Shown here: in pieces, positions 2,490 through 57,116 of the stretch | How positions within the stretch are numbered: position 1 is the stretch's first letter | Layout of the letters: every line of letters begins with the position of its first letter | Source of the DNA: Macrostomum lignano | Lineage: Eukaryota | Reading direction: 5' to 3' | NCBI GenBank assembly: GCA_002269645.1 | Contig: NIVC01000510.1 | Span: 29,878 to 93,877 of the forward strand | Length of the DNA stretch: 64,000 nucleotides | Position numbers and translations under genes: made by a program | Notes under the pieces: model-generated | What the model was told of the DNA's origin: nothing | The model's input: the letters and a program-made list of their open reading frames with translations, nothing else | Databases searched by the model: none

Positions 2490-10654
<8,165 letters not shown>

Positions 10655-11309
10655 CTATGCGTAGCATATAAGTAGTATGACTGACTGGGTCATTCCATGT
10701 TTAAGTAACGTGTTACGAGAGAGAGATTCACTTTTTGCATGCCGATAATGGGGATTGTGCCATAGACAAATCTTAATCCTTCTAGAAATTATTTAAACAA
10801 AGGAAATAGTTTGTTATTACTGAAACTAAGAACTAAACTAAACACAAATAATCAAATTTAATTTATTATCAAAAACTGACTTTGTCATAAGCGCAATTCT
10901 AGCACCAATATATTGTATATTTGTCAAGTCGAAGTTAAAAAAAGATTGAAACCATATACTTAAAAAATCAACAATAAATTGCAGGAACCAACTAAAAATC
11001 TAAAACTGATTATGCACTATTACGAGTACAGTAAAAATCAGTGTAACAACCATAAAAAATTCGATTGCACTTGAAGGTTTCTTTGTAAAAAATCATCTAA
11101 ATAGACACAAAATTAAAAGTTCGTTTAAAAATTTCTGGAATGACTCATCTGGCGCAAAAAAGCAACATACATGTAATGGCTCGCCCAGGTTTCATTGGGC
11201 AACAGAGTGTCTTACTAGTCGCTTTGTCATTAGAAATAGTAGAGTAGAACAGCGCAGTGTTTTTTAACCAATAAATAATAATCATTGATTACACCTGCTC
11301 TAATTGCGG

Positions 11310-11582
11310 CAGATGTGCAACCGACAGCTCAGCCGCAGCTATTGCGCGGCCCATCTGAAGGCTGCGTACGGCTGTTCAGTCCAAGGACTTGGGGGTTGCC
11401 ACAAACACAGCCTCAATTACCCCAGCTAATGCTGGCACCCATTTTACAGCTGAGTGAACTGAAGCAATGTAGAGTCAAGCGTCTTGCTCAGAGGACACAA
11501 ATTGTTCCGAGTGGGGTCGAGAATCGAACCCCCGACCTTTAAGTCGTGAGTCCGACGCTCTGACCACTAGGCTACAACCCCC
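11310..11582 (-). mobile_element. tRNA-derived SINE, apparently full length, with CORE-like central domain
   Basis: The minus strand starts GGGGTTGTAGCCTAGTGG (A box) ... GGTTCGATTC (B box), then TGTGTCCTCTGAGCAAGACGCTTGAC, similar to the MIR/CORE-type GTGxCCTTGGGCAAGTCACTTAAC. Related copies lie at 31391, 56348 and (complemented) 22219. Confidence 0.85.
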
Positions 11583-14600: not shown

Positions 14601-17600
14601 TGCAACTGGAATTGACCTCGAGGGTGTTTAATGCAACTGAGACTGACCTAGAGGGTGCTTATTGCAACTGAAATTGACAGATGGTGCTTATTGCAACTGA
14701 AATTGACATAGAGGGTGTTTAATGCAACTAGAATTGACCTAGAGGGTGTTTAATACAACTGGGACTGACCTAGTGGGTGTTTAATGCAACTGGAATTGAC
14801 CTAGAGAGGTTTATTACAACTGGAATTGACCTAGAAGGGGTTTATTACAATTGGAATTGACCTAGAGGGTGTTTATTGCAACTGGGACTGACCCAGAGGG
14901 TTTTTAATGCAACTGGAATTGACATAGAGGGGGTTTGATGCAACTGGGACTGACCTGGAGGGTGTTTATTGCAACTGGGTTTGACCTAGAGGGTGTTTAA
15001 TGCAACTGGAATTGCTTTGATGGGGTTTATTACAACTGGAATTGGCCTTAAGGGTGTTTAAAGCAACTGGAATTGGCCTAAAGGGTGTTTCATGCAGCTA
15101 GAATTGGCCTAGAGGGGTTTTATTACAACTGGGACTGACCTGGTGGGTGTTTAATGCAATTGGAATTGACCTAGAGGGTTTTTAATGCAACTGGAATTGA
15201 CCTAGAGGGTGTTTATTACAACTGGGACTGGCCTGGAAGGTGTTTAATGCAACTCGGGTTGAGCTGTAGGGAGTCAGAAACCTGAGGTAAACAAACCTCT
15301 CCGCAGGCCCAGCCGGCATGGAGTTCTCCACTGTTATCCTCATCGACGCGTACCCTGAGGCCAGCCGCCAGAGCATCCGAGTTGGTCGTTCAACTTTGGA
15401 CACCTGGTCCAGATTGGCCAGGCATACAAAGGGGGAGCCGCTGTGGCCTTGCGGACTGCGCAGGTAGAGTCTCTTGTCGGTGAGGATGAGGTGACCGGCG
15501 CCCAGCTTCTCCACGTGCACCAGACTGCCGGCTTTGAGAACGATCTGAATTATTGGATAGTGGGGGCATGAGCTAGTTAGTGCTGTGCTAGCTTTGCTTA
15601 GGGATGTGAGAGGCTGGCCCAGCAACTGAGGATCTGGGAGCCTGGCTCAGCAACTGAGGATCTGAGAGGCTGGCTCAGCAACTGAGGATCTGGGAGGCTG
15701 GCTCAGCAACTGAGGATCTGGGAGCCTGGCTCAGCAACTGAGGACCTGGGAGGCTGGCACAGCAACTGAGGATCTGGGAGGCTGGCTCAGCAACTGAGGA
15801 TCTGGGAGGCTGGCTCAGCAACTGAGGATCTGGGAGACTGGCTCAGCAACTGAGGATCTGGGAGACTGGCTCAGCAACTGAGGATCTGGGAGGCTGGCCC
15901 AGCAACTGAGGATCTGGGAGGCTGGCCCAGCAACTGAGGATCTTGGAGGCTCGCTTAGCAACTGACACTCTGAGAGGCTGGCCAAGCAACTGACACTCTG
16001 AGAGGCTGGCCAAGCAACTGAGTATCTGGGAGGCTGGCCCAGCAACTGAGGATCTGCGAAGCTGTCACAGGAACCGAGCTTTTGGTTGTAGAAAAACGGA
16101 AGTTTGATATTCGATCTTAAGCTTGTTACAGTGGAGTCAGCAACAGACTCACCGCGCCATCCTCGGGCGCATCAACGTCCAGCAGGCCGCGCACCCGGCT
16201 GCTCCACATTTCGTAGAAAGCGTCGAACACTCCCGGATCGACGCCGAATTTCTCCTCCGGCATCAGCAGCTGGTCGCCGTCCTCGTCTTCGATGTTGATG
16301 TCAACGTTGGCAGCAGTGCCGGTGACGGCAGACTGGTCCAGCGAAAGCAGCAACAGGGTGTTGAACAGCCTCCGCTGGAGTTCCTCGTCGAAGCTGATGC
16401 CCAGATTGGCCAGACACTCGCCGAAGCTCGTCTTGCTGATGCAGCGAGTTGGCAGCTGAATTTGGCGACTAATCCTTCGCCGATCTTTTAAAGCTTCGTC
16501 GCCGGATTCAATTGTGTCGACGACGTCTCCGCCTGCTACGGCGGCGGCTGCAGCTGCGGCTGCCACAGCGGCCGTCATGATCGACGCCGGCTGCTCGAAG
16601 CTGTCCTCGGCGTCCAAATCGAAGTTGCCACCGCTAGCTGAATGAACGAACTGGCGCAGCTGGTCTAGCTCCTCTTTCAATGCCTGACGCTCGGCATCTG
16701 ATAGGCCGCGCATAATCTCGCGAACTGCCGGCTGGTTCACCAGGCGACTGTCCAGTCTGTAGCACTCGTGACAGTCGCGCAGAGCTGGCACGTTCTGACC
16801 AGTGGCCAAGTGGTACATGCTGCGCAGGTAGTGAATCGCCACGCGCCTGGGTGCAAATTAAAAAGGTTAGAAAGGTGCAGCTTTGAGATGGTGTACCTTT
16901 GAGATGGTGTATCTTTGAGATGGTGCAGCTTTGAGATGGTGTAGCTCTGAGTTGGTGTACTTTTGAGATGGTGCAGCTAAGCTAGAAGTGTTTCAGACCT
17001 GCTTCTCTCGGCTCCATCCAGCTGCCTGCCCAGCATGTCGATGCAGCGCTGATAGAATCCGTCTCCGCCAGCCTCCTTGGGGAAGTACTCCGGCAGCTGC
17101 AGGTAGTCCGGATTGCGCTGACTCGGCTCCAGCTCCGGCACTCGTGGCATGGACATCAGCGCGGTCGACTGACGCTTTTTAGTCTGTGCGTAGCTCTGCT
17201 TCCGGTTGCTGCGAGCCTGCCGATCCCAGGCGTCCTCCCGGTTGTCGAGCCGGTCGTGCAGGAACGCGTCAAACATGGTGCCGTTGACAACCATTTCGTA
17301 GAATGACCGATCGGCATTGGGCAGCGAGTTCAAATAGCCGTCCTTGTTGAAGAAGCGAGCCTCCTCTTTGATGAACTGGGTCACTGTGCCGAATAACTCG
17401 ACCATAAGCTGAAGGAAAGTGTTCAGCAGCAGGTGCCGATTTTCCATGTTGAACTGAGTCTTCTGCTTGTTGAAGTCCTCGATGGACAGAGCATCGGGCT
17501 TGGATAGAATGACCCAGTCAAAGTTCAGCTTCTTCAGCCTCGGCGATAACTGATCTTTTAATCGACGCAGCACATCCCTGTTAATTAGGGGGGGTAATAA

Positions 17601-19045: not shown

Positions 19046-21393
19046 AGTAGTTGTAGTGATATTGGTAGAGGTAGTAGTATAAGTAGTAGTTGTTGTAGTA
19101 GTATTGGTAGTAGTAGTAGTAGTAGTAGTAGTAATAGTGGTACTTCTAGTACTAGTAGTGGTCGTGGTCGGGGTGGTAGTAGTAGTATTAGTAATATAGT
19201 CGTGTATCAACACTAGCATTCTTTGTCGTTGTGGTCGTAGTAGCTTTTATAGTAGTGCTTTGTGTGGTTTAAATCGTAGCTTTCTACTAACAGTAGTAAA
19301 TAGCACCGCTTTTGTTTGTTGTGCACGCATTTAAGCACTGCTTTTGATGGTATCCTGTCTGTCCGCTTTCCCGCACACTTATTCAAAATTTTTCGTTTGT
19401 CACGCTACGCTCGTCGAATCGCATTTCGCATTTATTACAACTCTATTTAGTCGAGTGAATTCAGTAGAAAGGTAAGCGCTAACACAATGACTCCTGGACG
19501 ACTTTTTCGGAACGCTTCTACAACTCATGTGATGCGCTGATGACTCAACAGTCGCCTCTCCATCGCATTACAGTCGATTGAGTCGTTTAAAAGTCACAAG
19601 AGTAGCCTAGTGAGTTATTTGCAATGTCTCTTTAGCGATTCTTGTCACGGTAACGTTTTCAACGGGATTTGCGGCAGAGCCAAAATTCAGGCTTAAAAAC
19701 CTATATCCGGGCTACCCAATGATGTTAAACAAGCGCACCTCATCATTCAGTCCATCCACGTCATCGTCTCGACAGTCTTCCTCTAAGCGAAGCTGCACCA
19801 AGCTGTCATCGTCTGCATCCTCTTCGGCGTCCTCATCGCTGTTGGGGCCAGCATTAGCCAGGCTGGGTTGCCGTCTGGCGCGGTACTGCCGACCGAATGT
19901 CAGCAGGGTGGCGTAGAGTCGGTCGCCAGATATGTGCGTCAACACATGATAATCGATCCTCGCTTCCAAGGGGCGGGCACTGATCTGCAGATGGGAGGTG
20001 AAAACTTAGTTATCTAAAGCACGGTGACCAATTCAAGACACGGTGACCAATTCAAGACACGGTGACCAATTCAAGACATAGTGACCAATTCAAGACACGG
20101 TGACCAATTTAAGACAGGGTGACAAATTCAAGACAGGGTGACCAATTCAAGACATAGTGACCAATTCAAGACACGGTGACCAATTTAAGACAGGGTGACA
20201 AATTCAAGACAGGGTGACCAATTCAAGACACGGTGACCAATTTAAGACAGGGTGACAAATTCAAGACAGGGTGACCAATTCAAGACACGGTGACCAATTC
20301 AAGACACAGTGACCAATTCAAGACACTGACCAATTCAAGACACTGACCAATTCAAGACACAGTGACCAATTCAAGACACTGACCAATTCAAGACACTGAC
20401 CAATTCAAGACACTGACCAATTCAAGACACTGACCAATTCAAGACACTGACCAATTCAAGACACTGACCAATTCAAGACACTGACCAATTCAAGACACTG
20501 ACCAATTCAAGACACTGACCAATTCAAGACACTGACCAATTCAAGACACTGACCAATTCAAGACACTGACCAATTCAAGACACGGTGACCAATTCAAGAC
20601 ACGGTGACCAATTCAAGACACGGTGACCAATTCAAGACACTGACCAATTCAAGACACTGACCAATTCAAGACACGGTGACCAATTCAAGACACTGACCAA
20701 TTCAAGACACTGACCAATTCAAGACACTGACCAATTCAAGACACGGTGACCAATTCAAGACACGGTGACCAATTCAAGACACGGTGACCAATTCAAGACA
20801 CGGTGACCAATTCAAGACAGGGTGACAAATTCAAGACTTTGTGACCAAATACAAGACAAAAAGCGAGATAATTCTAGACATACGGCATCGATGGGCATTG
20901 GAGAACAGTAGAATTCAAAACACACAAACGCACCATTATGCTTAAAAGTACAAACCTGCAAGCCTTCCGGGTAGCAGAGATCCGGCAGTCCTTCCGCCAC
21001 CTCGCCAGCCACCTTCTTCTCGTGCTTTGTCACCGCAATGTTGCGCACAGACGACATTCGTCTACCGTCGGCTCCGCCAACACCAGACAGGCCGCCGCCG
21101 ATGCCGCCGCCGCCGACGCTGCTACCGGTGAGCGTTGGTCGTCGACGCATCAGTCGAGCCAGAGTCTGCTGCTGCTGGTCCTCGTCAGACATCAGCGACT
21201 TAACAACGTCAGCATTCGCTCGGGCAAAGCTCGGCCGACGAGCCTGCCTACTAGATGCCGCCGAGATTGACTGCCGCGGCGAAGACGACGGAAGCAGGGA
21301 CTGGACGATGCCCAGGCGACGACCCCCACGGCCGCCACCACCGCCGCCGCCGCTGCTGCTGCCGCCTCCGACACCAAGGCTCGCTAAATAAGG
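11666..21393 (-). CDS. DENND3: DENND3-like Rab GEF (uDENN-cDENN-dDENN, GRAM/PH-like, C-terminal WD40), exons 3-11
   Basis: Exons (minus strand) 21393-20956, 19984-19739, 18447-17837, 17577-16999, 16846-16153, 15544-15297, 13885-13354, 13078-12705, 12329-11666; all phase-consistent. Motifs include EGLPDLCYPEG, YHVLTHISGDRLYA, ILVSKLPYFS, ALLTDQRIV, LLYPMRWNLPY, HLILTDKRLYL and the WD repeat LHGHADVVECL...SHDGYIAVWD. With the two exons in the complemented block the CDS is 4749 nt (1582 aa). Confidence 0.88.
12335..12630. repeat. About 75-80-bp tandem repeat, about 3.5 copies
   Basis: TGTACATT...GTCTAGGGCC...GCTGGAGGA recurs near 12339, 12413, 12492 and 12565. Confidence 0.85.
13110..13330. repeat. 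21-bp minisatellite (GAGACGGTAGACAGGGTAGAT)
   Basis: Directly visible. Confidence 0.88.
13910..15260. repeat. 31-bp minisatellite (GGGTGTTTAAAGCAACTGGAATTGGCCTAAA)
   Basis: About 1.35-kb array with a homogeneous 5' block and a variant 3' block. Confidence 0.95.
15605..16060. repeat. 28-bp minisatellite (CAACTGAGGATCTGGGAGGCTGGCTCAG)
   Basis: Directly visible. Confidence 0.93.
16875..16980. repeat. 16-bp minisatellite (CTTTGAGATGGTGTAC)
   Basis: Units at 16881, 16897, 16913 and onward. Confidence 0.88.
17677..17736. other. Intronic hairpin element, copy 1
   Basis: AGGGTGTACAGCGGCCCTGAC-loop-GTCAAGCATGTACACTCTCT..GCCTTGGGGT; near-identical to 21598-21659 except in the loop. Confidence 0.6.
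18965..19210. repeat. (GTA)n microsatellite
   Basis: Directly visible; source of the poly-V/poly-T ORFs. Confidence 0.93.
20020..20850. repeat. 17/19-bp minisatellite (GACCAATTCAAGACAC[GG]T)
   Basis: Directly visible, with two interleaved unit lengths. Confidence 0.95.
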
Positions 21394-21659: not shown

Positions 21660-21841
21660 GTAGGCTCTTATGGGTTGGATGTAAATCGTGCGACAACCGG
21701 TGGAGGGTCCCGGTTCAAGCCACGTGTTTGTTCAGGGTTTAATTAAGGGGGGTTGGGAGGAGTCCGGTTATAGAAGGACTAATAGAAGGACTTCAAATTC
21801 ATCGATTTTTAGTTAATACTTTTTCGAGAGAAAGTAGAGTG

Positions 21842-22013
21842 GCCGCGGAGCGACAGAAGAAGGAGAAGTAGGAGGAGGAGATAGTACCACCCTCAGACCC
21901 GTCCGCCGACGACTACGACGACGAGTTGGTCGGCTGGGACCCGCTCCCTCGCTCTCCGGGAGCTCGGGCGCACCTTTCGACCGTCACCCATCTTGCCTCG
22001 GTGACCGCCCACC
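21842..22013. CDS. DENND3: DENND3-like coding exon 2 (inside complemented block; true strand minus)
   Basis: Letters read 22013->21842 without complementing: tttacag|C CAC CCG CCA GTG GCT CCG TTC TAC...GAG GAA GAA GAC AGC GAG GCG CCG|gtgaga (HPPVAPFYPLPAF...EEEDSEAP). Phase 2 in, phase 0 out. Confidence 0.85.
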
Positions 22014-22218
22014 GACATTTAACTAATCTTTCTCTTTGTTAACGAAAGAAATTATCTGTTGGAGCAACTGTTATCCTGTTGACGTACATTCAATCTCCCG
22101 TCAACCTTTAAAACGCTTAAAGTTCACTACCGGCCAAAAGTAACATCAATACACAAAGCAGGCTCGATAACAACAAAGTTATAATTATTATTATTAACTA
22201 ATATGGATGTGTTTATCT

Positions 22219-22490
22219 GTCTACACGTTGGCTGTCGAGTCGGCGTCGATAACGCGCCGCGTAGACTTCCGACGCATGCCGACAAGTCAGGTTCCTGACC
22301 CCCAGCGGTGCGTGGGAGTTAATGGGCTCGATCACGACCGTGGGTAAAATGGCGACCCACTTGACTTCGTTACGTCTCAATTCACAGAACGAGGTCCTGT
22401 GTTTAACAAGACTCACCCAGCTCTTAGCTTGGGGCTGGAAAATCAGCACTCAGGCTGCGAGATTGGTGATCCGATGTTGGATGTTGGGGG
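22219..22490. mobile_element. SINE copy in complemented form
   Basis: The plain complement aligns by eye end to end with 11310-11582. Confidence 0.9.
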
Positions 22491-22584
22491 ACAAAAGTTC
22501 GATAACTGTTAATCCTTCAAGTCTTAATAATTTCGACTGCTAGTTATTAGATACCTTTTCGTGCGATTTCTGTGTTTATGATTG

Positions 22585-22775
22585 AACAACCCTTTTTGGC
22601 GGAATCTAAGCAACTGTCAACGATCCTTTGTTCCGAGCATCCGCTACGACCAGTCGTCGAACAAACCTGGCGACGGTCGCGGCGGCGGACCGGCTCCGGC
22701 CTCTGACGACGACAGTAGCCGCGGTTGATGCTGTTCATGAAGATTCTCTGCTAAGAAATCTATTTTCGGTCTGTA
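22585..22775. CDS. DENND3: DENND3-like coding exon 1 (inside complemented block; true strand minus)
   Basis: Letters read 22775->22585 without complementing: ATG TCT GGC TTT TAT CTA AAG AAT CGT CTC TTA GAA GTA CTT GTC GTA GTT GGC GCC GAT = MSGFYLKNRLLEVLVVVGAD...YEPCFLATVNESKAVFPN, ending AA|gttagt. This is a typical uDENN first strand. Confidence 0.85.
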
Positions 22776-23717
22776 ACGTTAATCATTATTGACGACGATA
22801 GTTACTTAAAGAAAATTGACGAAGACGTTTTCTCCCCCAACTTGAGATAAATAATCAAAACTCAATTTCAAAGTTTTTTACGTATAGTAACTTAATTTAC
22901 TTTAACTTTAATACGAAAAGAAGAAGAAGAAGAGTACACGTTATCAATATAACAGCCACTGATTCATTTTAACAAAGGATTGAACTGGTATCACTAAAGT
23001 TAATAGTACCATCGCATCGCAAATCATCTTTTGATTAACTATTAAATAGGTTAACCAACTTCTTTTTATCTCGACAATCCCATTTACACTATTCATCCGA
23101 CAGACATTTTTTATCTTATTTTATGACGTTAAAAATAACATTGAGGAAAGAGATTAGATTATCCTTGTATTAAATACATGGTGAGCATATAGTAAAATAC
23201 TTTAAATCCCACTGACTTTTAATACCGATAGATTTTTGACCGTCAAACTAGCTATTTGATCAATCTGACTAATTTGAACTCTATGTTGTTGTTTCTTTAA
23301 GTTTTATACAGTATAAACCACATACTCACGATCGTCTTATTTCATTTTTTATAATCACTAAATCTTTTTTTGGGTCTTTATTTGACAGACTTAAGAAACA
23401 TAGAGTGTAGGTATAAACATTGTCATAAACTTTGTTGTTAAGAGATGACTCAGTCATAACCGACTGTCATGGCGCGCACTACGATTAGGCGTCACGCCTA
23501 ATTCAGCTTTAAATTAACTGAATTTATTAATCTGTTTTTTAGATTTCGGTATGAGGATGGTTTACGTAAAAAATAATCAGCAATGTGCTCATGTAAATTG
23601 TAAAATTATTTTTTAATATAAATTTATTTATCTATTTATGTTATTTGCGTTTTTGTAGACGAAGTCGTTTCGAAAAATTTTTATCAGAAACAAAATGACA
23701 TTGACAATCTTTTCAAG

Positions 23718-23846
23718 ATATACGTTGTTGTTAAAGTTTTTTGCAAGAGGAAAAATGACTGAAAAGTATCTAGCTATCATCACACTCAAATAATCACAAA
23801 TTTCATAAAACATAGCGTCAACCTTGGACCTTCGTCGGATTTTTAC
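23718..23846. promoter_or_regulatory. Candidate eEF2 TATA/TOP promoter, short 5'UTR intron and ATG-only first coding exon (complemented block; true strand plus)
   Basis: The complement reads TATAT (23718), TTCTCCTTTTT (23745-23755), a gtgagt...tcgcag 37-nt intron (23783-23819), then exon TTGGAACCTGGAAGCAGCCTAAAAATG|gtaagc (ATG 23844-23846). Phase 0 matches ttttag|GTG AAC at 30891. Confidence 0.55.
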
Positions 23847-24562
23847 CATTCGAGGACAAAAAAGACGATGATAATCGATTTAATAAAACGTCATAACGAC
23901 ATAAAAATGACCATTACGTATTAAGACCGACAAAGCGGGGTTTGATTTGGTAAGGACGGTTCCTGTAGAAAGGAAAAATCTGGCAAAGCGGGTATTTATT
24001 ACAAATCTTTAAAAAAAACGTTAATCCAGATCATTAAAAGCAGATGAATTGATCCGGATACCGATACGTAGAAAATAAAGCTTCTAAACCATAGATTGAT
24101 TTCTTCTAAATCTTCATAGTTAGTTTCTAAATCACAGATTCCTTTCCTGGTAAAACTTTAAACGCGAACGTTGTTATTTCCTGGAAAAAACGTTGACAAC
24201 GCTGTTAAGTTCCTGAAAACGACAACGCGTGTCTAAGGTTTGTTACGGTTTAAATGTAACGTTTTTAGATAGTGTAGTTCAATTTAACGTAAATCTTTGA
24301 CGTGTAAAAGATTTAAAAGGTTTTTACAAGAAATCAATTTGTTTTTGAAAGATATTGTAGAAACTTATTAGTTTTTATAATTATCCATGATTGTTTAAAA
24401 TTTTGAAATATAAACCTTTTCATGATAATGATAACATTTATTTTTACCTTAAAAAATTTGAGAGTAACAACAATTACAATCCGGATGTTACACGTACATC
24501 AAAACATTTTCTTTTTAATATCATCACCCACACGGTTTTCAAAGAGTTCGAATTTTACCACG

Positions 24563-25284
24563 GGGGATAACCTTATTCAACTGTTTTACACCTACTGGTA
24601 GGCAGTGTAAAAACCTAAGAGGACCACAGCGTAACACGTTGTCACCATAGTTCACCACACAGTACAACGCGTTGTAACCTTTGGTCTACAGCAGTACGTA
24701 ACGTGTTACGTTGCGTTGTCACACCGTTGAACCACAGACCGTAGTACACAGCGCAACGCCGGATCTATACATCGGTTTTGGAGTATTTGACACAAAGTAA
24801 CATTATACAAATACAACAAAGAACCATAAATTTACAAAATTTGTACAAACTATTATTGATCAAGAACTTAACAAGAAAAAATAAAACTGCCATTTCATTG
24901 ATTATGAAGTTTATATTAAAAATCTTTACAATGAACAATCAATGTTACGTACGTGACAAAAGATTCACAACATGGAAACAACAAAATGACAAATAACAAA
25001 AATTTAAAGTAAAGAAAAAGACGTTTTAACTTTCCTTATGAAAACAGAGAGTGAGGTACCAGAACCACAACCCTCACTTACCGTTTTGTCTTTAACAGTT
25101 AACGTTGCACCGACGATACCACAGGAGGGGGAGGGGGACCAATAAGCCAACAGTCACAACGCAACGTGCAACGTAGCGGTGGGGGGATCAGTTGTTTTAA
25201 ACCACAGCGCAGTACGAAAACTTCCGTGTTAAAACCGTGGGTACAACGTACAGGCGTCCAAAAACTTTGAATAAGGTTATCCCC
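24563..25284. mobile_element. MITE-like element with an 18-bp perfect inverted repeat (within complemented block)
   Basis: GGGGATAACCTTATTCAA (24563-24580) versus TTGAATAAGGTTATCCCC (25267-25284); outer ends not resolved. Confidence 0.45.
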
Positions 25285-26344
25285 ACCACGGGGTTTCACC
25301 ATGGGATTATACGGTTTGAGAAGTTACCATACAACCTTTTAAGACCACATGTACATTGGAACTCACATCCATACGGTTTTCATCCGTACGTGTCAACCGC
25401 ACGTAGTGAGGACTCTTTAATCATACGTACGTGTGGACCGTATGTTGAATATCTTAGAACACTTTCTCAATCATTTTTTTCTTATTCACTTTTTTTATTT
25501 TTAGTAAAATTCATTTTTTATAATTCGAAAGATCAAAAAAGTTCGAACATAATTCCGTAAATTTGTTTATAAACGTATATAGTTAAAAAACGATATTTAT
25601 TATATCCCCTTTTTCGTTTTTTTAGTTGGTTTATTAATCGGTTTTCACAAGAAGTGCGTTGGGTTTTTTCCAGTAAATAACAACGTTAAGATCGTATTTA
25701 AATTCTCACACTCACATATGAGTTTTAAAAAACACACGTGGGCGGACCGACAGTATTAGACCAAAAGTAGGTTTCGTTGTAGGGCTTAAAGTAGACCATA
25801 CATTATGTTTACAGAGTAAATTTTTGGCCTACTCTCGGCCTACTTTTCAAATGTTTGGTCTACTTTTGTACGTATAAACTGGAAAGTAGACCCACAAGTT
25901 GGTTGTAATCAGGCCTTTAAGTAGGTCCTTCGATAGACCTTTCGACGTCTCTTGTCCCGCCTCGTTTAACACCTCGTTTAGACCTGCTTTACATACGTAC
26001 GGAGGTGGCCTACTCTTTGGCCTGTTTTAAGGTCTACTTACGGCCTAGTTTACATACGTGTGGAGGTGGTCTACTTTGACCTACTTTAAGGCCTACTTAC
26101 GGTCTAGTTTACATACGTGTACAGATGGCCTACTCTTTGACCTGTTTTAAGGTCTAGTTTACATACGTGTTCAGATGGCCTACCCTTTCGTCTATTGTAC
26201 AATTTCTTGATTCATTCCAACTGTTGTTCTGCTTTAGAAAACTTTTACATTCTCTTGTTTAACGACCTTTGTGGAGTTTCTTTCGTTCCATATAACGTGA
26301 ACGTGTCTCCCACCGGTTGGAAATTAAGTGAAACGATCTATCTC

Positions 26345-26750
26345 ATCACCTTCGACTTATATAACTTTGGCTTCTATGTACGCGTTATCAGCCGACTGGC
26401 TAAACCGCCGGTTGGTTACATTCAGTGTTTTTACGGGTGGGCTTATTTATGTTTTCATCATGATTCATCTACTGTTCCGTAAAAAGGAATTATTCTCTCA
26501 GTATCAATGAGAACGACAATTGGGTTTCAACGTAACCAAAAAAACATGGCTTATAACTTTGGCTTGTATGTACGCGTTATCAGCCGGCTGGCTAAACCGC
26601 CGGTTGGTTACATTCAGCGTTTTTACGGGTGGGTTTATTTATGTTTTCATCATGATTCATCTACTGTTCCGTAAAAAGAAATTATTCTGTCAGTATCAAT
26701 GAGAACGGCAATTGGGTTTCAACGCAACCAAAAAAATGTACATTCAGCGT
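26345..26750. repeat. 192-bp tandem duplication (within complemented block)
   Basis: Sequence near 26360 recurs 192 nt later; the ORF track shows twin ORFs at 26328 and 26520. Confidence 0.8.
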
Positions 26751-29700
26751 AAAAACCGGTTTTTTGGTACAGCGTAAAAACAATTTTGATTCAACGTGTC
26801 GGCTGGTTTAAAACCTTCAACGCGTACATACTTTGGTTTCTATTAACAATTTCAACGTACAGCGATTTTTACGTTTATGTGTTCTGTACGAACTCAGTTT
26901 TTATCTTACCGTTTTGGAGTATAACCCACCTGTTTAGTCCTCTTTACCTCTTACTCTACTGTGTGATAGAAAATCCGCCGATGTTTAATCATGATCCGTC
27001 TTTTTGATCTTTAAAGTGTCTTCTTTTTGAAGGTCGATGTGCTTCTTTATCCGCGTCTTTTTTTTGAGTGAATATTTTAACCCCTGTTGTCTTTTTTATC
27101 GCTGTATATGTAAAAAGGTATGATCCTCACTTTGTTTTACAGTTGTCTTTTGATCTTTACATCTGGGTTCCAACTATAATGGATAGACGTCTTGTCACTA
27201 ATAACATGTGCAATCATTACAATTCATTTCAATGACAAGATTTTATGGGTGGTACCACATATCTAACGTCCGTTATCCATGTAGCACGTATAAGTCGTAC
27301 AGAAACAAGGAAGTTGACTATTATATTATATGAGGGAAGAAAAAGTAATAACACAGAAACTAGACTAACGACCTGACTATTCTTTCTATGTGATATCTGT
27401 TGATTTGTATTAATCAATAACTTAGTGTTTCGTATTCGTTATTTGAAACCTTTTAAGGTAATTTGTATCCGGTTTCCGTTGTATCTGTTGTCACATAAAT
27501 TTAACTTTAATCCTATTGTATACCGTGTTTTAATGATGCCGAAAACGGTGTTTTACATACCGAAAATATGGTAGAAATCACTATGTCGAGATATTAAGTT
27601 ATGAATGTTCATGAAGTGTTAAATACAGTGAGTGTCACACTGGTCGTTGTTTTTACACTCTTTATTGGGTCGATCTTTCTTTTTTGTGTCATCGATGAAT
27701 TTACTTCTTTTTCACTTTTTGTAAGTGATATCGTTAAAACGGTTACGAATAAATAACAGACTTATCTTTAAGAACAAAATTAAGTAAGGTCGATTAAGTT
27801 CGTCGTGTAAAAGTAAAATTTAGTTATAGTAGTAGTTAGTATGTAACATCCCTATCTAACTCTGCCATAATGGGATAAACAGATCCGATCACCGGAAGGA
27901 ACGATAACGGTCAAGGAAAGGTGGGTTCATCTTTTATATTTTTGTGTTCTTTTTCGATTTAACCCGACAAATAAATTCAAATTGTGTCTTTTTTCTACTG
28001 AAGAATTTTTTGTGTTATTGTGTCGATAAAATTTTTTCGTGTCTTTTTGTGTTTATTGTGTCGTCACCAGTGTAACCAGTGAGTAATGTATAAAGAAATG
28101 GATTATTGTTGAGTTACGTCAGAACGTTTAATGAATGAGTATTTTTTAGGTTCAGGGGAAAGGCTTGAGTCATAAAGTAGACCTGAAGAAGGTAAAACAC
28201 GTAACCAGAAATAGACCGAAAACCACCCAGTTACCTGTCCTACATTTTGGCCTGTTTTAAGGCCTGGTTCTATACGAAAGAAGGTCAAAAGTAGACCAAA
28301 AGTTAGACCGACTAACAATCTCAAATTAGCTGTTCAGTTGCCTAGTTTTTGACCTACTTTTCTCAGTGTTTCTCTTGAGAAAGTAGGCCGAAATGAGGCC
28401 TAAAACCGGGTCAAAAACCAGGTCTTTGTTTTTGACCTAGTTTTGGCCTAGTTGTAGAAAAACCAGGCTTTTGTGGGGGGATTTTGCCCAATTTGGCCTG
28501 CTCCGGTCTACTTTTGGTCTAATGCTGTCGGTCCGCCCGTAAATATTAAGTTAAAAACAAGTCCATACGTGGAACGTACTAGATCTGATACAATATACTC
28601 AACTATTAAAAAATACACTATCCTCCGTTTCTTTCTTAAAAACATGTTTTAGGTTCTACGTAAGACATACATAACGTTTTTTGAACGTACGTATAAAAAC
28701 TATTTGAACACATATGTATAATCTGTTTGAACACGTGAACTCAGTAACGATTTTTGAACTTCATACTAAAGTAAAATTTTCCAACATATAATGTGAACAT
28801 GGTTACGACCCTAACCAACCCTGTTTAGTTTGAACCAGGTTACACGATAGAATTGTTAGAGATATACGGTTCGATATATGGTTTTTCCGTGTAATCCGGG
28901 AAAACATGTGGTTCAACATACGGTTACCACATGAGGTCCAGAAAACATACAACCTTAAAGACCGTATATATATTTGATAGATTTGAGACCGTGAACATTG
29001 TACATTTTGTCTAAAATAACGTACATTTTCGTTAACCGAAACCCGTTTTTATATAAAATAACAGTTTTACTGTTTGGTATTTTCCAGGAAATAACAATGT
29101 TGAAATTCTTCAGAAATTCATAACGTTATATTCTTTATAAACGTGTACAATTACATATTTGTAAGAAATTTTTTCATGTGTTAAAATTCAAGATTTAATC
29201 GGTACGTTTCTAAGATAGGATCTGGTTTTAATGAAATATCTTATATAAATATCTGTATTATTTTTAGTGTTCCGCAGTAGCCATAGCTACGGGATCCTAT
29301 GGCAATTACGGTAAAATAGGTGCCTACAGCAGCTACAGATACGCCTACAGTAGCTAGCTGCTCTTATGGCTACAAATACGGAAATATGGTAGTTGTTGTC
29401 AGATTCTGTAGATTGCCATAGCCATAGTTACTGTTTAAAAATTGAAAAAATATTAGAAACAGGTAGAATAAAACAAATATACTTTTAGTAAACTGTATTA
29501 TCAACTTTGAAACTTTTAAAATATACCTAATAAAGTACAAACAAACACTAGCAAATTCTATTTTTTTATGTGAAAAAGTTCAGCATTAGTACTTTCATTA
29601 ACAATTTAGTATTGTCGCTCTGAAAAATAGATAAAATATAATCTTACGAAGTCAATCAAGTGTTTCTTTTATTTTGTAACTTAATTTGCAGTTTTTTAAG

Positions 29701-30890
29701 CACTAGGTTATCTTATTGATTCAAAATATTTTGTTTTCTAGACTTTTTGTTAAAACTATGGCTATGGGAACTATTGGAATATGGTAATATTGGGGTCCCT
29801 ATGGCTATGGAATATGGAGAATTGGAATAAGCCATAGTTTTGCTTATGGCTACAGCTATGGTACATGGACCCTCCTTACAGCAAAACACTAACTATTTTG
29901 TTAAGATTATGTTTTGTATAGATCTACAATTGTCAAAATATTAATAGGTGTATATATAGTTTAGGTGATTATTTTTGGAAAATATTCAAACTATCATATT
30001 GTTTTTGTATAAGATCATTTTGAATTTGTTGCAGAATATTTAGACAAACATATAGGATCCTCATAAGATGCCTATCAAGGAAAGTGTAGAAATATTCATC
30101 AAATTTTAAGACACAAATATTAAACAAAGATAGCAAATCTAGTAAGTAAACTAATGAAATTAAATGAAAGAACACTGCCACATTTTTGCAGCCAATGTAT
30201 AAACTATACCAGATACCTTTTTCCCACACTAGTGCACTAGATTGCACATAGTATTAAGGGCAATCCATATCAGATGCTATCCACAATAATGGCAAAACTA
30301 AAACTGGAAATAAAGCATATGCAATAAAAGATTAAAAGCTAGTCAACTAGTCAATTGCACCATTTGACATAAAAACTAGTTTTTTATTGCTATATTGTTA
30401 TTAAAATTAATAAACTGGAATAATGCATAGTAGCATATTCACTAAATTATATAGAACACCTTAACTTGGTCACATAAAATATGCAGCATGATTCCATTTA
30501 AAAATGCTACATCTTACACTTGTTTAATTTAAAAGCAAAGCCCCAGACTACTACATAAAGATTAAAGAAAGAATTAAAATAAGAAACTGCTTCTAGGTAT
30601 TCAGGAAAATTTCATTTAGAAGCATGCAACCCCCTAATTTACACTGGATGTGCAACTTACTTTTTGACTTTTTTGATGTTTGTTAAAAATGTTTGTAATG
30701 AAATTCTTTATTTATGCTGTTTCATAAATCTCATTAATGATGATAATTTTGAATCTTGCCCTAAAAACCATGTGGGCTTTCAGCTACTAGATGGACTGAC
30801 AAAATTATGATAACTCTATGATTTTGCACCGCTTTAAATTATGGTTCTTGGTAATTAACATGGCCCCATCACTTTACTAAAATATTTTAG

Positions 30891-33800
30891 GTGAACTTCA
30901 CTGTTAATCAAATCCGTGGCATGATGGACAACAAGCGGAACATCCGCAACATGTCTGTCATTGCTCACGTGGACCACGGCAAGTCGACCCTGACCGACTC
31001 TCTTCTCTCCAAGGCTGGCATTATCGCCTCGGCCAGAGCTGGCGAGACCAGGTTCACCGACACGCGCAAGGACGAGCAGGAGCGCTGCATTACCATCAAG
31101 TCTACGGCTGTTAGCATGTACTACGAGCTGACTGAGGCCGATGTGAAGTTTGTCAAGACCCTGCAGGAGGTGTCCAAGCGCAGCGATGGAACGGACGAGT
31201 CCGGCTTTCTGATCAACCTGATCGACTCGCCTGGCCACGTGGACTTCAGCTCTGAGGTAAGTTGTTGTCAGGTGACCTTTTGGACAACAAATAGAGGAGA
31301 GTCTCCTGTACACAAAGCCACTATTCGACTAATTTGTACAAGTAAATGACCTTATTTGAACTCTTAGTTCAACACAATTACCTGCACATAGGTGTTGTAG
31401 CCTAGTGTTCAAAGCGTCGGACTCACGACTTAAAGGTCGGGGGTTCGATTCCCGTTTCCACTGGAAACAATTTGTGTCCTTGAGCAAGACACTTAACTCT
31501 GCATTGCTTCAGTTCACCCAGCTGAAAAATTATTAATTATTATTGTTACCTGCACATGATGACCTTATACTGCCCCAGGCTGAAAAATATTTTTATTGAG
31601 GATTCAGTTCTCTGATGCAGGTGAAGTTTTCTGTTTTTTTTGCGGTAGTCTTGAAGAGAATATTGTTTTAGTAATCGGCTATTATTATTGCCTAATTATG
31701 ACGAACAGGTGACCGCCGCTCTGCGCGTCACCGACGGCGCCCTTGTCGTCGTGGACTGCAACTCTGGCGTGTGCGTGCAGACGGAGACGGTGCTTCGGCA
31801 GGCCATCGCCGAGCGCATCAAGCCGGTGCTGTTCATGAACAAGATGGACTGCTCGCTGCTGACGCTCAAGAAGGGCAAGGAGGATCTGTACCAGCAGTTC
31901 CAGCGAGTCGTTGAGAACATCAACGTGATCATCGCCCAGTTCGGCGAGGAGGGCGGCCCGATGGGCAACATCTTCGTGTCGCCGGAGAAGGGCACCGTCG
32001 GCTTCGGCTCGGGCCTGCACGCTTGGGCCTTCACGCTGAAGCAGTTCGCCGAGATCTACGCCTCCAAGTTCAAGATCGAGCCGGAGAAGCTGATGAAGCG
32101 TCTGTGGGGCGACAACTTCTACAACACTGAGACGAGGAAATGGGTGAAGACTCAGGAGAGCGACAAGTGCGTTCGCGGCTTCATCCAGTTTGTGCTGAAC
32201 CCAATCTACCAGGTAAGATATTGATGCGTTTTTTTAGTCGCCTGTTGGTTTATCAGCTCATGCGTGATGACCTTATACTGCCCCAGGCTAATGCAATCAA
32301 TTAAATGCTGCAATTGATGATTCAGTTTGTCTGACCAGAGCTGTAAACCAGTCAGCGCTTTTATCTATAACATCTAAAAAGTATTTTTTACCTGCACATG
32401 ATGACCTTATACTGCCCCAGGCTGAAAATATCTTATTGAGGATTCAGTTCTCTGATGCAGGTGGAAGACTTTTGTTTTTATTGTCACATTTATTTCTCAG
32501 CATTGTCCTTGCTATATACTGTACCATCGATTGTACATTCACCGATTCATTCTACAGATGTTTGACGTTGTGATGGACCAGCCGATCGAGGAGGGCCTGA
32601 AGCTTGCCGAAAAGCTCAACATCAAGCTGGACGCTGAGGAGCGCGAGCTGACCGGCAAACAGCTGCTTAAAGTGATGATGCGCAAGTGGCTCCCAGCTGG
32701 CGACACTCTGCTGCAGATGATTGCCATCCACCTGCCGTCTCCCGTGACCTCCCAGCGCTACCGCATGGAGCTGCTGTACGAGGGACCCCACGATGACGAG
32801 GCCGCCATCGGCATCAAGACCTGCGATCCGAAAGCGCCGCTCATGATGTACATCTCGAAGATGGTGCCGACCTCCGACAAGGGTCGATTCTACGCCTTCG
32901 GTCGGGTGTTCTCCGGAGTTGTGAGCGCCACCAAGGTGCGAATCATGGGCCCCAACTTCGCGCCGGGCAAGAAAGACGACCTGTTTGAGAAGAGCATCCA
33001 GCGCACCATCCTCATGATGGGCCGCTACACCGAGCCTATCGAGGACGTGCCGTGTGGCAACATCTGCGGCCTGGTTGGCGTCGACCAGTTCCTGGTGAAG
33101 ACCGGCACCATCACCACCTACGCCGCTGCGCACAACATGCGCGTCATGAAGTTCAGCGTGTCGCCTGTCGTTCGCGTCGCCGTTGACTGCAAGAATCCGT
33201 CCGACCTGCCGAAGCTGGTCGAGGGTCTGAAGCGCCTGGCCAAGTCCGACCCCATGGTGCAGATCTACAATGAGGAGTCTGGCGAGCACATCATCGCTGG
33301 AGCCGGCGAGCTGCATCTGGAGATCTGTCTGAAGGATCTGGAGGAGGATCACGCCCAGATCCCCATTAAGACTGGCGATCCCGTGGTGTCGTACCGCGAG
33401 ACTGTTACCAACGAGAGCAACCAGGTTTGTTATTTACTTTGCTAGAGTCAGAGAGGCTGCGTGCATCCTGGCGCACTTTAAGTGGCATTGTCGGGCAAAC
33501 CGGCGAGAGGCATTACTGTCCATTATCGCTTGGCATGTACACTTCAGTGTGCTTTTGTGGTTAGCCCTTAAAACGACGTTAATTGCTCAAGCAGACCCAG
33601 GTGTGTTATCCTTTAATTAGCAATAGGAGTTTCCCTAGCACCAGAGTCCTCAGACTAGAAGCCTGTCTTCACCGTCTGACAATGAGATCAGAGACCAGTA
33701 ACCTAGAAAGGCACAGTGCATAGAGTACTATTTGGCCAATTTCACAATCCGGTTGTTGATACTGAATTACAATATTACACTGCAGACGGTGCTGTCCAAG

Positions 33801-35185
33801 TCGCCCAACAAGCACAACCGGCTGTACATGAAGGCTCGTCCGCTAGACGAGGATCTTTCCAAAGACATCGACGATGGCAAAATCGCGCCTAGGCAGGACG
33901 CCAAAGAGCGCGGCCGCATCCTTGCCGACACCTACAACTGGGACGTGACCGAGGCTCGCAAGATCTGGTGCTTTGGCCCGGACACCAACGGCGCTAACCT
34001 GGTTGTCGACGTCACCAAGGGTGTACAGTACCTGGCCGAGATCAAGGACAGCGTTGTGGCCGCATTTCAGTGGGCCACCAAGGAGGGCGTCATGTGCGAC
34101 GAAAACATGCGCGGCTGTCGCTTCGACATCTGCGACGTAACGCTGCACACCGACGCTATCCATCGCGGCGGCGGCCAGATTATCCCGACTGCTCGGCGCT
34201 GCTTCTACGCCGCCGTGCTGACCGCTGAGCCGGCCCTGCTGGAGCCGGTGTATCTGTGTGAGATCCAGTGCCCCGAGAACGCCGTCGGCGGCATCTACGG
34301 CGTGCTGAACCGTCGTCGCGGTGTGGTGTACTCCGAGGAGCAGGTTAATAAAAACAGCTCTTGTTAGCTATCTTCAAGGGTTCGTATGGAAACCTGCCAC
34401 AATGGCCCTTATTTCCCATGAAATTCGCCCTTATATCCCTACAGGAATCACCCTTATATTTCATGGGAATCGCCCTTATATCCCATGGGAATCGCCCTTA
34501 CATCCCATGGGAATCTCCCTTATATTCCTACAGGAATCGCCTTTATATTCCATGGGAATTTCCCTTATATTCCTACAGGAATCGCCCTTACATCCCATGG
34601 GAATTTCCCTTATATTCCTACAGGAATCGCCCTTATATTCCATAGGAATCGCCCTTATATTCCATGGGAATCGCCCTTATATTCCATGGGAATCGCCCTT
34701 ATATTCCATGCGAATCGCCCTTATATTCCATGGGAATCGCCCTTATATTCCATAGGAATCGCCCTTATATTCCATGGGAATCGCCCTTATATTCCATGGG
34801 AATCGCCCTTATATTCCATGGGAATCGCCCTTATATCCGGATTTAATGGCGGATAGTAACAGGAGTTGACCCTAAATTCATGCCATTATTGCAACAGTCA
34901 CTAACAGCAAGCGCCAATCAATCCCGTGAACAGGTGACCGGCACCCCGATGTTTATCGTGAAGGCCCACCTGCCAGTTAACGAGAGCTTCGGCTTCACCT
35001 CGGATCTGCGCCAGGCCACAGGCGGCCAGGCCTTCCCCCAGTGCGTGTTCGACCATTGGCAGGTGATGCCTGGCGACCCGCTGACCGCCGGCACCAAGCC
35101 CAGCCAGATCGTGATAGACACGCGCAAGCGCAAGGGCCTGCAGGAGGGCATCCCGCCGCTGGACCGGTTCCTGGACAAGCTGTGA
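30891..35185 (+). CDS. EEF2: Eukaryotic elongation factor 2 (all coding exons except the ATG exon); 849 aa in total
   Basis: Exons 30891-31256, 31709-32212, 32558-33424, 33786-34343, 34934-35185; all phase 0 and GT-AG. Motifs: [50 protein letters not shown], and the diphthamide loop [16 protein letters not shown]. Confidence 0.98.
31391..31525 (+). mobile_element. SINE copy (tRNA head plus CORE-like part, 3' half missing) with 12-bp target-site duplication
   Basis: Matches the reverse complement of about 11445-11580; followed by an AAAAATTATTAATTATTATTG tail; TTACCTGCACAT occurs at 31378-31389 and 31546-31557. Confidence 0.85.
31548..31622 (+). ncRNA. SNORD31: Box C/D snoRNA, U31/SNORD31/snR67-like, copy 1
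   Basis: Terminal stem ACCTGCA/TGCAGGT; box C ATGATGA (31556); guide CCTTATACTGCCCCAGG; D' CTGA; C' TGAGGA; box D CTGA (31612). The guide pairs with the conserved LSU P-loop CUGGGGCGGUA. Confidence 0.85.
32254..32343 (+). ncRNA. SNORD31: Box C/D snoRNA, U31-like, copy 2 (divergent)
   Basis: Stem CAGCTC/GAGCTG; box C GTGATGA (32264); same guide; D' variant CTAA; C' TGATGA; box D CTGA (32331). Confidence 0.8.
32390..32462 (+). ncRNA. SNORD31: Box C/D snoRNA, U31-like, copy 3
   Basis: Stem ACCTGCA/TGCAGGT; box C ATGATGA (32398); same guide; D' CTGA; box D CTGA (32452); nearly identical to copy 1. Confidence 0.85.
34390..34830. repeat. 22-bp minisatellite (GGGAATCGCCCTTATATTCCAT)
   Basis: Lies in the last eEF2 intron; directly visible. 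Confidence 0.93.
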
Positions 35186-47330: not shown

Positions 47331-47689
47331 GGTTGGATGTTGCATAAAATAGACAGAAGAGCCTATACTGCATGGCACTTAAAATGTGAAAAACTAAGAA
47401 AATGTTGCGAACGCAATCATGCAACATAATTAAGCTAGTGAAAAAGCAAGCACATTGAAAAATCCGTTTTTACTGTATGGCAAATAAAGTACATAAGGTA
47501 CTACTGATGCTAGTAAGACATGCAGCGGAAAGCAACGCTAAGCGGGTACAAATGGAAGCCGCTTGTCCAAGTAAAGCTGACAACAAAAAGTTGTTGACAA
47601 TAACAAGCTTAAAAAGCAGCATGGACTTTAACCATAAACACTCGACAGAGCGACAGTCAAACTTAAAAGTTAAGCATCTTTAAAATCAT

Positions 47690-56347: not shown

Positions 56348-56565
56348 GGGGTTTAGCCTGACTGAAGCCCAGTTGTTATTTGTGTCCTTTAGCAGTGACA
56401 CTGAACTCTGCATTGGTTCAGTTCAACCAGCTGCAAAATGGGTGCCAGCTGGGTAACTGAGGATGTGTGTGGCAACCCCCCCCCCCCTAGTCCTTGGACT
56501 GAACAGCTATACAACCTTCAGACATGCTGTGCAATAGCTGTAGCAGAGCTGTCGGTTGCACATCT
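56348..56565 (+). mobile_element. Diverged SINE copy (head partly deleted)
   Basis: TTTGTGTCCTTTAGCAGTGACACTGAACTCTGCATTGG...AAAATGGGTGCCAGC...AGTCCTTGGACTGAACAGC...GAGCTGTCGGTTGCACATCT matches the reverse complement of about 11311-11500. Confidence 0.8.
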
Positions 56566-57116
56566 ATCTATTAGGACAGGTATAATTAATCAGGTACTAA
56601 TATTAATATTACCCATAAATGTTCAACTCCCAAATTTTACATAATCTATGCAACATTGCTTTTCACAAAAATATGACATAACTATATCAAAAGAGCCTTT
56701 TGGCAATAGCTTCCCTTGTTTTCTCTCAGTTTTACAGGTTTTTCTATTGATTAATTCATTTCTTTTTTCATTTTTTGTCATGTGTATCTTTCTTTAATTT
56801 ATTGGGGGCTTTGTTGATTGATCTAGCAATATACCTACCTTGACTGAGTGTTATGCAATAAATGCCTTAAAATAACTTTTGTTAGTTAAATTTTCAATTT
56901 TTTCCTAAAAATATAAATGTAGAATGATATAAATGGTTAATATATTATAAAAATTTAAAGTTTCAAGCAAGCTATACTCCACCCTTTGGCTTTGTGGTTT
57001 ATTTAAAACTGGTCATTTTTTATTTTTTGTCTACTACATGTTAACTAGACTTTAAAATTAAATGGCATCTAACTAAAAAACAGGTTGTCACTTTGGTATC
57101 TGGGTAAACATTCAAT

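What the first reader, a model, noticed from the sequence alone, without database searches (positions are those of the whole stretch)
21670..29265. About 7.6-kb block is the complement-without-reversal ('mirror') of real DNA
Seen: the plain complement of 22219-22490 reproduces the SINE at 11310-11582 in the same left-to-right order, with the first 41 nt identical. The block is rich in ACGT/TACGT words where the flanks are rich in TGCA, and it has no convincing ORF in the six normal frames although two genes point out of it. Established: a true inversion gives the reverse complement, and polymerases do not produce a parallel complement. Inference: the block was complemented in place by an assembly, gap-filling or file-handling step, or was planted. 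A genuine biological origin would be unprecedented and is unlikely. Practical effect: both flanking genes would be annotated as 5'-truncated.
Basis: partly seen in the sequence, partly recalled or inferred. Interest (0 to 1): 0.9.

Follow-up and report, generated by a model that had tools for sequence, protein, structure and literature searches.

The report
Complemented-but-not-reversed 7.6-kb sequence block
About 7.6 kb of ordinary animal DNA (the promoter, first exon and first intron of the elongation factor 2 gene) has been written with every base swapped for its pairing partner but not reversed, which is a data-handling or planted artefact and not biology.

Summary
From about 21670 (±15) to about 29265 (±50) the window reads as the plain Watson-Crick complement of normal DNA, without reversal. 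As written, the block matches nothing else in the window on either strand. Its plain complement matches three copies of a tRNA-derived SINE, with E values down to 1e-109. CG/GC is 333/153 and ACGT/TGCA is 68/4, the inverse of the flanks, and this holds in 18 of 18 400-bp bins.

Complementing the block in place restores a pyrimidine-rich leader followed by ATG|GT at 21885. This is the missing one-codon first exon of the eEF2 gene, whose exon 2 at 30891 starts at residue 2. It sits head-to-head with a DENND3-like gene. That orientation, and the G+C continuity at both junctions, show the true sequence is the in-place complement and not the reversal.

The junctions carry no repeats and no N gaps. 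No known polymerase makes a parallel complement, so this is a file, assembly or script error, or a deliberately planted block. I could not tell which, because the source species is absent from every collection available here.

Biological interest is low. The value is for quality control.

The parts
21670..29265 (.). Block written as the plain complement (no reversal) of the true sequence. The left edge is 21664-21680 and the right edge 29212-29314 by likelihood changepoints.
   Evidence: word statistics and Markov forward/reversed log-likelihood; 0 hits as written, 3 hits after complementing.
22182..22480 (-). tRNA-derived SINE copy, readable only after complementing. After repair it has the same orientation as the copy at 11271-11579, with the head at the right and the A/T-rich tail at the left.
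   Evidence: E 1e-109, 89.3% over 309 columns; alignment of four copies; 41-base identical prefix.
21846..21887 (+). Candidate eEF2 exon 1, read on the complement. It is a pyrimidine-rich (TOP-like) leader ending in ATG at 21885-21887, followed by the donor GTGGGAGT at 21888. The 5' end of the exon is not determined.
   Evidence: 88% pyrimidine in the 40 bases upstream, the highest of 42 ATGGT[AG] sites in the repaired window (next best 65%).
30891..31259 (+). eEF2 exon 2, in normal DNA. It starts at residue 2 (VNFTV...) after the acceptor TTTTAG, and the TAG is in frame, so the initiator ATG must come from an upstream exon. The 3' end given is approximate (last residue aligned to solved eEF2).
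   Evidence: aligns to residues 2-115 of solved eEF2 chains, E 8e-56.
20812..21192 (-). First coding ORF of the DENND3-like gene, which points away from the block. Its ATG is at 21192 with an in-frame stop upstream, so the coding sequence is not cut by the block.
   Evidence: Pfam DENN, dDENN and TPR_DENND3 on downstream exons.
11271..11579 (-). Reference SINE copy in normal DNA. On the - strand its head carries an A box (TAGCCTAGTGG) and a B box-like motif (GGTTCGATTCT).
   Evidence: The box motifs were read directly from the sequence. ARAGORN and Rfam do not call it.
31394..31530 (+). Partial SINE copy (head half) in an eEF2 intron, in normal DNA.
56378..56610 (+). Diverged SINE copy (tail and body) in normal DNA.

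Best explanation
The stretch from about 21670 to about 29265 is ordinary nuclear DNA of an animal genome. It holds the shared promoter region between a DENND3-like gene and eEF2, eEF2 exon 1 (leader plus ATG), and most of the roughly 9-kb first intron with a SINE and two small tandem repeats.

It has been recorded base by base as its Watson-Crick complement without reversing the order. Put another way, the opposite strand has been written 3'->5'. The true sequence is the in-place complement.

The cause is a non-biological step. Candidates are a script or editor applying 'complement' to a coordinate range, a scaffolding, patching or gap-filling step that reversed a segment without complementing it when it needed flipping, or a deliberate plant in this test window.

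Shown: the transformation, its extent, and that complementing restores genuine features. Inferred: which step caused it.
For: 1. As written, the block matches nothing else in the window on either strand. Its plain complement matches three SINE copies, at E 1e-109, 3e-47 and 5e-44 (alignment).
2. Word statistics that distinguish forward from backward reading are inverted over the whole block and only there. CG/GC is 2.18 against 0.35-0.82, (AC+GT)/(CA+TG) is 1.30 against 0.75-0.89, and ACGT/TGCA is 68/4 against 89/276. All 18 of 18 bins agree. The Markov log-likelihood falls by 156-276 units across the block, with sharp turning points.
3. eEF2 exon 2 starts at residue 2 and is preceded by an in-frame TAG, so an upstream ATG exon is required. 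The complement supplies a leader of 88% pyrimidines followed by ATG|GTGGGAGT at 21885, on the + strand, at the G+C-rich left end next to the divergent DENND3-like gene.
4. G+C content is continuous across both junctions as written: 0.57|0.52 on the left and 0.29|0.32 on the right, in 400-bp windows. An in-place complement predicts this; a reversal does not.
5. The two junctions share no direct or inverted repeats, and the window contains no N.
6. From established knowledge, template-directed polymerases make antiparallel complements only.
Against: No raw reads, no second assembly and no public record of this locus could be reached. The best eEF2 hit in 5.8 billion proteins is 78-85% identical, the exact-protein look-ups found nothing, and a metagenome scan gave 0 matches. 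So the artefact was not shown directly, and I cannot say whether it sits in a public assembly or only in this window.

The exon 1 assignment rests on sequence context alone. The junctions are located only to about ±15 bases on the left and about ±50 on the right.
Confidence: 0.9

Rival explanations
1. It is still an artefact, but the true sequence is the reversal of the written block and not its complement. In this case a segment that should have been reverse-complemented was only complemented, so the real locus is inverted relative to my repaired version.
For: This is the commonest slip ('complement' chosen in place of 'reverse complement'). SINE homology and word statistics cannot separate the two readings, because the reversal is simply the reverse complement of the complement.
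Against: It would put the TOP-like ATG|GT exon on the - strand near 29050, pointing away from eEF2 exon 2. It would also join the 57% G+C left flank to a 29% G+C block end, and the 52% G+C block end to the 32% G+C right flank.
Confidence: 0.06
2. It is a genuine biological parallel complement: a stretch replicated with the systematic exchange A<->T + C<->G ('swinger' DNA as proposed by Seligmann), or synthesised in parallel orientation.
For: The formal pattern is exactly the one described for 'swinger DNA' with sharp switches, for example the 16S gene in the Kamimuria wangi mitogenome record (PMC4942731). One paper claims parallel-primed PCR synthesis (PMC4304224).
Against: No accepted enzymology exists for it. 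PMC4942731 itself notes that only the A<->T + C<->G rule has ever been seen in DNA records, and that rule is exactly what a 'complement' function produces. As written, the block would destroy the promoter, leader and start codon of eEF2, an essential gene. Yet the eEF2 coding exons in normal DNA remain well conserved: 78% identity to eEF2 of other animals over a 291-aa exon and E 8e-56 to solved eEF2 structures. The mirrored SINE is still 89% identical to its relatives, so it shows no sign of age.
Confidence: 0.005
3. The block is normal DNA with unusual composition (foreign or repeat-rich), and the mirror match to the SINE is coincidence.
For: Some tandem arrays in the window shift single dinucleotide ratios locally. 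For example 20001-21000 has CG 22 and GC 11, although the Markov test calls it normal.
Against: A 309-column mirror alignment at 89% identity (E 1e-109), plus two further mirror hits, cannot arise by chance. The only other mirror hits in the window are self-symmetric satellites. All 18 bins are shifted, not just repeats.
Confidence: 0.001

Closest known systems
Orientation-handling errors in sequence files ('complement' or 'reverse' applied where 'reverse complement' or nothing was needed)
   Same: The result is identical: the sequence becomes homologous to real DNA only after a plain A<->T, C<->G swap, and direction-sensitive words (CG/GC, TGCA/ACGT) are inverted.
   Different: Here it affects an internal 7.6-kb range of a longer gap-free sequence and not a whole record. 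The edges fall at no gap, repeat or annotated feature boundary. That points to a coordinate-range operation or a plant more than to a whole-contig flip.
'Swinger DNA' A<->T + C<->G with sharp switches (Seligmann; the Kamimuria wangi mitogenome 16S record), as described in PMC4942731
   Same: It is formally the same transformation, embedded between regular sequence with abrupt switch points.
   Different: That literature reads the pattern as a polymerase state. Nothing here supports a biological origin. This case is nuclear, mostly non-coding, and would disable an essential gene.
Chromosomal inversion
   Same: Both are a block with two breakpoints inside otherwise collinear sequence.
   Different: An inversion gives the reverse complement, yet blastn of the written block on both strands finds nothing. 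There are no inverted repeats at the breakpoints, and word statistics would be unchanged by a true inversion.
Mirror repeats / H-DNA-forming tracts
   Same: 'Mirror' symmetry of sequence. The (AGAGTG)n array at 4208-4921 is a trivial example and shows up in the mirror scan.
   Different: Mirror repeats are short tracts, usually homopurine-homopyrimidine, that are symmetric about their own centre. The block is complex sequence with no self-mirror hit.
eEF2 gene structure with a first exon carrying only the leader and the ATG (known for vertebrate EEF2; recalled from my own knowledge, not checked here), and eEF2 as a TOP mRNA
   Same: Exon 2 begins at residue 2. The repaired block supplies a pyrimidine-rich leader followed by ATG|GT.
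   Different: The transcription start and the splice were not confirmed by transcripts.

Membership tests
Complement-only / reverse-only sequence-handling artefact | The plain complement, in the same left-to-right order, is homologous to genuine sequence, while the written form is not on either strand. | tested here: met
   0 hits as written and 3 hits after complementing (E 1e-109, 3e-47, 5e-44). Alignment.
Complement-only / reverse-only sequence-handling artefact | Direction-sensitive word statistics are inverted throughout the block and switch sharply at its edges. | tested here: met
   CG/GC 2.18 against 0.35-0.82; 18/18 bins; changepoints at 21664-21680 and 29212-29314.
Complement-only / reverse-only sequence-handling artefact | Repair restores interrupted genes or features across the junctions. 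| tested here: met
   the missing ATG exon of eEF2 appears at 21885 on the + strand. G+C continuity at both junctions.
Complement-only / reverse-only sequence-handling artefact | Raw reads do not support the written junctions but do support the repaired ones. | not testable with these tools
   No reads, and no public copy of the locus.
Biological inversion | The reverse complement of the block is collinear with homologues, and word statistics are unchanged. | tested here: not met
   no hit on either strand; statistics inverted.
Biological inversion | Inverted repeats or duplications at the breakpoints (frequent but not obligatory). | tested here: not met
   only chance 8-10-mers are shared between the two junction regions.
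'Swinger' A<->T + C<->G DNA (Seligmann) | The sequence matches its template only after a systematic A<->T + C<->G exchange, with sharp switches to regular sequence. | tested here: met
   This is a formal description only (PMC4942731).
'Swinger' A<->T + C<->G DNA (Seligmann) | The molecule exists in the organism, produced by a polymerase. | not testable with these tools
   Needs raw reads or PCR. Prior plausibility is very low.
Mirror repeat / H-DNA | The tract is symmetric about its own centre, typically homopurine-homopyrimidine. | tested here: not met
   no self-mirror hit inside 21670-29265. Skews in the block are near zero.
tRNA-derived SINE (element at 22182-22480 after repair) | A tRNA-like head with pol III A and B boxes, a body, an A/T-rich tail, and multiple dispersed copies. 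| tested here: inconclusive
   Four copies align. The A box TAGCCTAGTGG and B-like GGTTCGATTCT were read from the sequence. ARAGORN and Rfam call nothing. Target-site duplications were not examined.
eEF2 gene (right flank) | The protein aligns to eEF2 from residue 2 onward and carries EF2 domains. | tested here: met
   (residues 2-115, E 8e-56); the hits carry PF00009, PF03144, PF14492, PF03764 and PF00679, with 78% identity to animal EF2.

The most novel reading that the evidence does not exclude
The block exists as written in the animal's chromosome: a 7.6-kb stretch of nuclear DNA copied as a parallel complement (a systematic A<->T + C<->G exchange). It would be the first case verified at read level of what has been called 'swinger' DNA.
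Probability: 0.004. Interest if true: 1.

Novelty: not a real feature. Interest (0 to 1): 0.1.

Why it matters
The biological significance is essentially nil, because it is a recording error or a planted control.

The practical significance depends on whether the block is in a public assembly. If it is:
- eEF2 would be annotated without its promoter, leader and start codon.
- Reads and RNA-seq would drop out over 7.6 kb.
- Repeat and CpG analyses would be distorted.
- The region could be mistaken for novel or foreign sequence, or cited as 'swinger' DNA.

The case also shows that a simple forward-versus-reversed Markov likelihood, or the CG/GC and TGCA/ACGT ratios taken together, can find such blocks automatically. 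Single ratios give false alarms in tandem arrays, for example at 20001-21000.

Tried and rejected
- Exact-protein look-ups of the two flanking ORFs, meant to fetch the public contig, found nothing on record.
- A protein homology search with a 291-aa eEF2 exon gave a best identity of 78-85%. The source species is therefore absent, and no second copy of the locus could be fetched.
- A metagenome scan with a 32-base exon-2 word gave 0 matches. I did not use the second scan, because a SINE-word hit would not bear on this locus.
- ARAGORN on the window and on the repaired window, with and without pseudogene mode, and Rfam at gathering threshold, found nothing. The SINE head is too diverged to be called a tRNA.
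- Pfam on the longest ORFs of the block as written and complemented gave no hits either way. ORF content therefore does not discriminate, as expected for promoter and intron.
- A search for repeats shared by the two junctions in all four orientations found only chance 8-10-mers.
- Alternative ATG|GT first exons in the normal DNA between 29266 and 30890: four sites exist, all A/T-rich with 47-55% pyrimidine. None is TOP-like.
- I considered intron strand skews as a test of complement versus reversal, and dropped the idea because the skews are small and variable.
- I considered and rejected three readings: only the SINE is mirrored (18/18 bins say otherwise), other mirrored blocks exist in the window (one search finds none), and odd-composition foreign DNA.
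Full report
**What the window is.** The window is animal nuclear DNA with no N.
- On the + strand, from 30891, lie exons of elongation factor 2 (eEF2). The first of them aligns to residues 2-115 of solved eEF2 structures at E 8e-56. A 291-aa exon is 78% identical to the eEF2 of other animals.
- On the - strand, ending at an ATG at 21192, lies a DENND3-like gene with Pfam DENN, dDENN and TPR_DENND3 domains.
- The two genes diverge from the interval that contains the reported block.
- The window is also very rich in minisatellites.

**Checking the observation.**
- The plain complement of 22219-22490 shares its first 41 bases exactly with 11310-11582.
- With gaps allowed, the complement of 22182-22480 aligns to 11271-11579 at 89.3% over 309 columns, E 1e-109.
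- It also matches two further copies of the same element, at 56378-56610 and 31394-31530 (four-way alignment).
- The block as written has no hit to the rest of the window on either strand at E<=1e-5.
- In a mirror scan of the whole window against itself, the only other hits are two self-symmetric simple arrays, at 4208-4921 and 48795-48914. There is only one such block.

**Extent of the block.** Complementing without reversing is statistically the same as reading DNA backwards, so words that differ from their own reversal are informative.

| Measure | Block 21670-29265 | Elsewhere in the window |
|---|---|---|
| CG/GC | 333/153 = 2.18 | 0.35-0.82 in 207 other windows of the same length |
| (AC+GT)/(CA+TG) | 1.30 | 0.75-0.89 in the same windows |
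| ACGT/TGCA | 68/4 | 89/276 in the rest of the window |

- All 18 400-bp bins inside the block have CG>GC and AC+GT>CA+TG. Outside, 17 and 20 of 139 bins do. The block is therefore continuous and not confined to the SINE.
- I trained Markov models of order 1-4 on the flanks (both strands) and scored forward against reversed reading. The cumulative log-likelihood rises up to 21664-21680, falls by 156-276 units, and turns up again at 29212-29314.

**What is really there.**
- eEF2 exon 2 begins GTG AAC TTC ACT (V-N-F-T) directly after the acceptor ...TTTTAG. That TAG is in frame, so the reading frame cannot extend upstream and only Met1 is missing. An upstream exon ending in ATG is therefore required.
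- In the complemented block, 21846-21896 reads ...CGCTGTCTTCTTCCTCTTCATCCTCCTCCTCTATC ATG | GTGGGAGT. The 40 bases before the ATG are 88% pyrimidine. That is the highest of all 42 ATGGT[AG] sites in the repaired window, and the next best is 65%.
- The four ATGGT sites in the normal DNA between 29266 and 30890 are A/T-rich and not TOP-like.
- A pyrimidine-rich leader is what is expected of eEF2, a classic TOP mRNA. This last point is established knowledge and was not tested here.
- After repair the region reads as a head-to-head, G+C-rich promoter region, then eEF2 exon 1, then a first intron of about 9 kb. The intron carries a tRNA-derived SINE (22182-22480) and two small tandem repeats (25988-26156 and 26360-26736).

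**Complement in place, or reversal?** The reversal of the block is the reverse complement of its complement, so repeats and word counts cannot separate the two readings. Two observations can.
1. The candidate exon 1 lies on the + strand upstream of exon 2 only if the truth is the in-place complement. Under reversal it would lie on the - strand near 29050.
2. G+C content is continuous across both junctions as written: 0.57|0.52 on the left and 0.29|0.32 on the right, in 400-bp windows. Reversal would join 0.57 to 0.29 and 0.52 to 0.32.

I therefore take the true sequence to be the in-place complement, with confidence about 0.9 against about 0.06. The same written result arises in two ways: a correctly oriented range was complemented, or a segment held in the opposite orientation was reversed but not complemented.

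**Origin.**
- The two junction regions share no direct or inverted repeat in any orientation.
- No tandem repeat lies at either edge, and there is no N gap.
- The left edge sits inside a promoter, roughly 200 bp upstream of exon 1. The right edge sits in featureless A/T-rich intron.
- This looks like an operation on an arbitrary coordinate range, from a script, an editor, a patch or a deliberate plant, more than a mis-oriented contig at a scaffold join. That is inference.
- A biological origin would need a polymerase that makes a parallel complement, and none is accepted.

The literature contains two contrary claims.
- Seligmann's 'swinger DNA' is reported only for the rule A<->T + C<->G, including a 16S gene embedded in an otherwise regular mitogenome record (PMC4942731).
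- One paper claims parallel-primed PCR (PMC4304224).

The only exchange rule ever seen in DNA records is the one a 'complement' function performs. That argues for file handling. As written, the block would also remove the promoter, leader and start codon of an essential gene whose coding exons remain well conserved.

**What could not be done.** I could not reach raw reads or any second copy of the locus.
- Exact-protein look-ups found nothing.
- No protein more than 85% identical to this eEF2 exists in the 5.8-billion-protein collection.
- A metagenome scan found no match.

Whether the block is in a public assembly or only in this window is therefore open.

- Only eEF2 is 5'-truncated. The DENND3-like coding sequence starts at 21192 with an in-frame stop upstream, about 480 bp outside the block.
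- The lack of ORFs is not evidence. The complemented block has no Pfam-supported ORF either.

**Verdict.** This is not a biological feature. Interest is low except for quality control. The most novel reading not strictly excluded is a real parallel-complement segment, at a probability of about 0.004.

Noticed in passing
window 3097-10334, 13909-16078, 20020-20858, 34401-36836, 42473-45473, 47688-49175, 50136-53284, 53684-55655: The window is unusually dense in mini- and microsatellite arrays, many with strong strand skew. Examples: (AGAGTG)n at 4278-5381, a 31-bp unit x43 at 13909-15254, a 19-bp unit x46 at 20020-20858, a 43-bp unit x25 at 35751-36836, a 21-bp unit x51 at 42473-43543 and a 24-bp unit x37 at 44590-45473. 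Several create long spurious ORFs.
   Followed up: partly
window 20001-21000: The 19-bp tandem array in the DENND3-like intron has CG 22 > GC 11 and GTC+GAC 94 against CTG+CAG 32. On single-word ratios it looks 'mirrored', yet the Markov test calls it normal. A whole-assembly scan for mirrored blocks should therefore not rely on a single ratio.
   Followed up: partly
window 4208-4921 and 48795-48914: These simple arrays are nearly identical to their own reversal and so appear in the mirror scan. The first is purine-rich on the + strand and is formally a mirror repeat of the type that could form H-DNA.
   Followed up: no
window 11271-11579, 22182-22480, 31394-31530, 56378-56610: This is a tRNA-derived SINE family of about 300 bp with an A box, a B-like box and a (TAA/ATT)-rich tail. 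The window holds four copies, one of them inside an eEF2 intron. ARAGORN and Rfam do not recognise it.
   Followed up: partly
window 49191-56058 (- strand), 61628-62407 (+), 7124-8263 (+), 11666-13797 (-): Other probable genes, judged only by reading ORF translations. They are an integrin-beta-like gene (cysteine-rich EGF-like repeats and a DxSxS-type motif), a MORN-repeat-like ORF, a beta-1,4-galactosyltransferase-like exon, and WD-repeat-like exons that probably belong to the 3' part of the DENND3-like gene. None was checked against a family library.
   Followed up: no
window 30891-35185: The eEF2 of this organism is at most 78-85% identical to any entry in the 5.8-billion-protein collection. 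The best named hit is Branchiostoma floridae at 77%. The source species and its close relatives are not represented, so the organism remains unidentified.
   Followed up: partly
window 29270-29900 and 34401-34836: Short words related to GCCATAG/CTATGGC recur in the intron just right of the block. A 22-bp array (AATCGCCCTTATATTCCATGGG) lies in a later eEF2 intron. Any relationship between the two was not examined.
   Followed up: no
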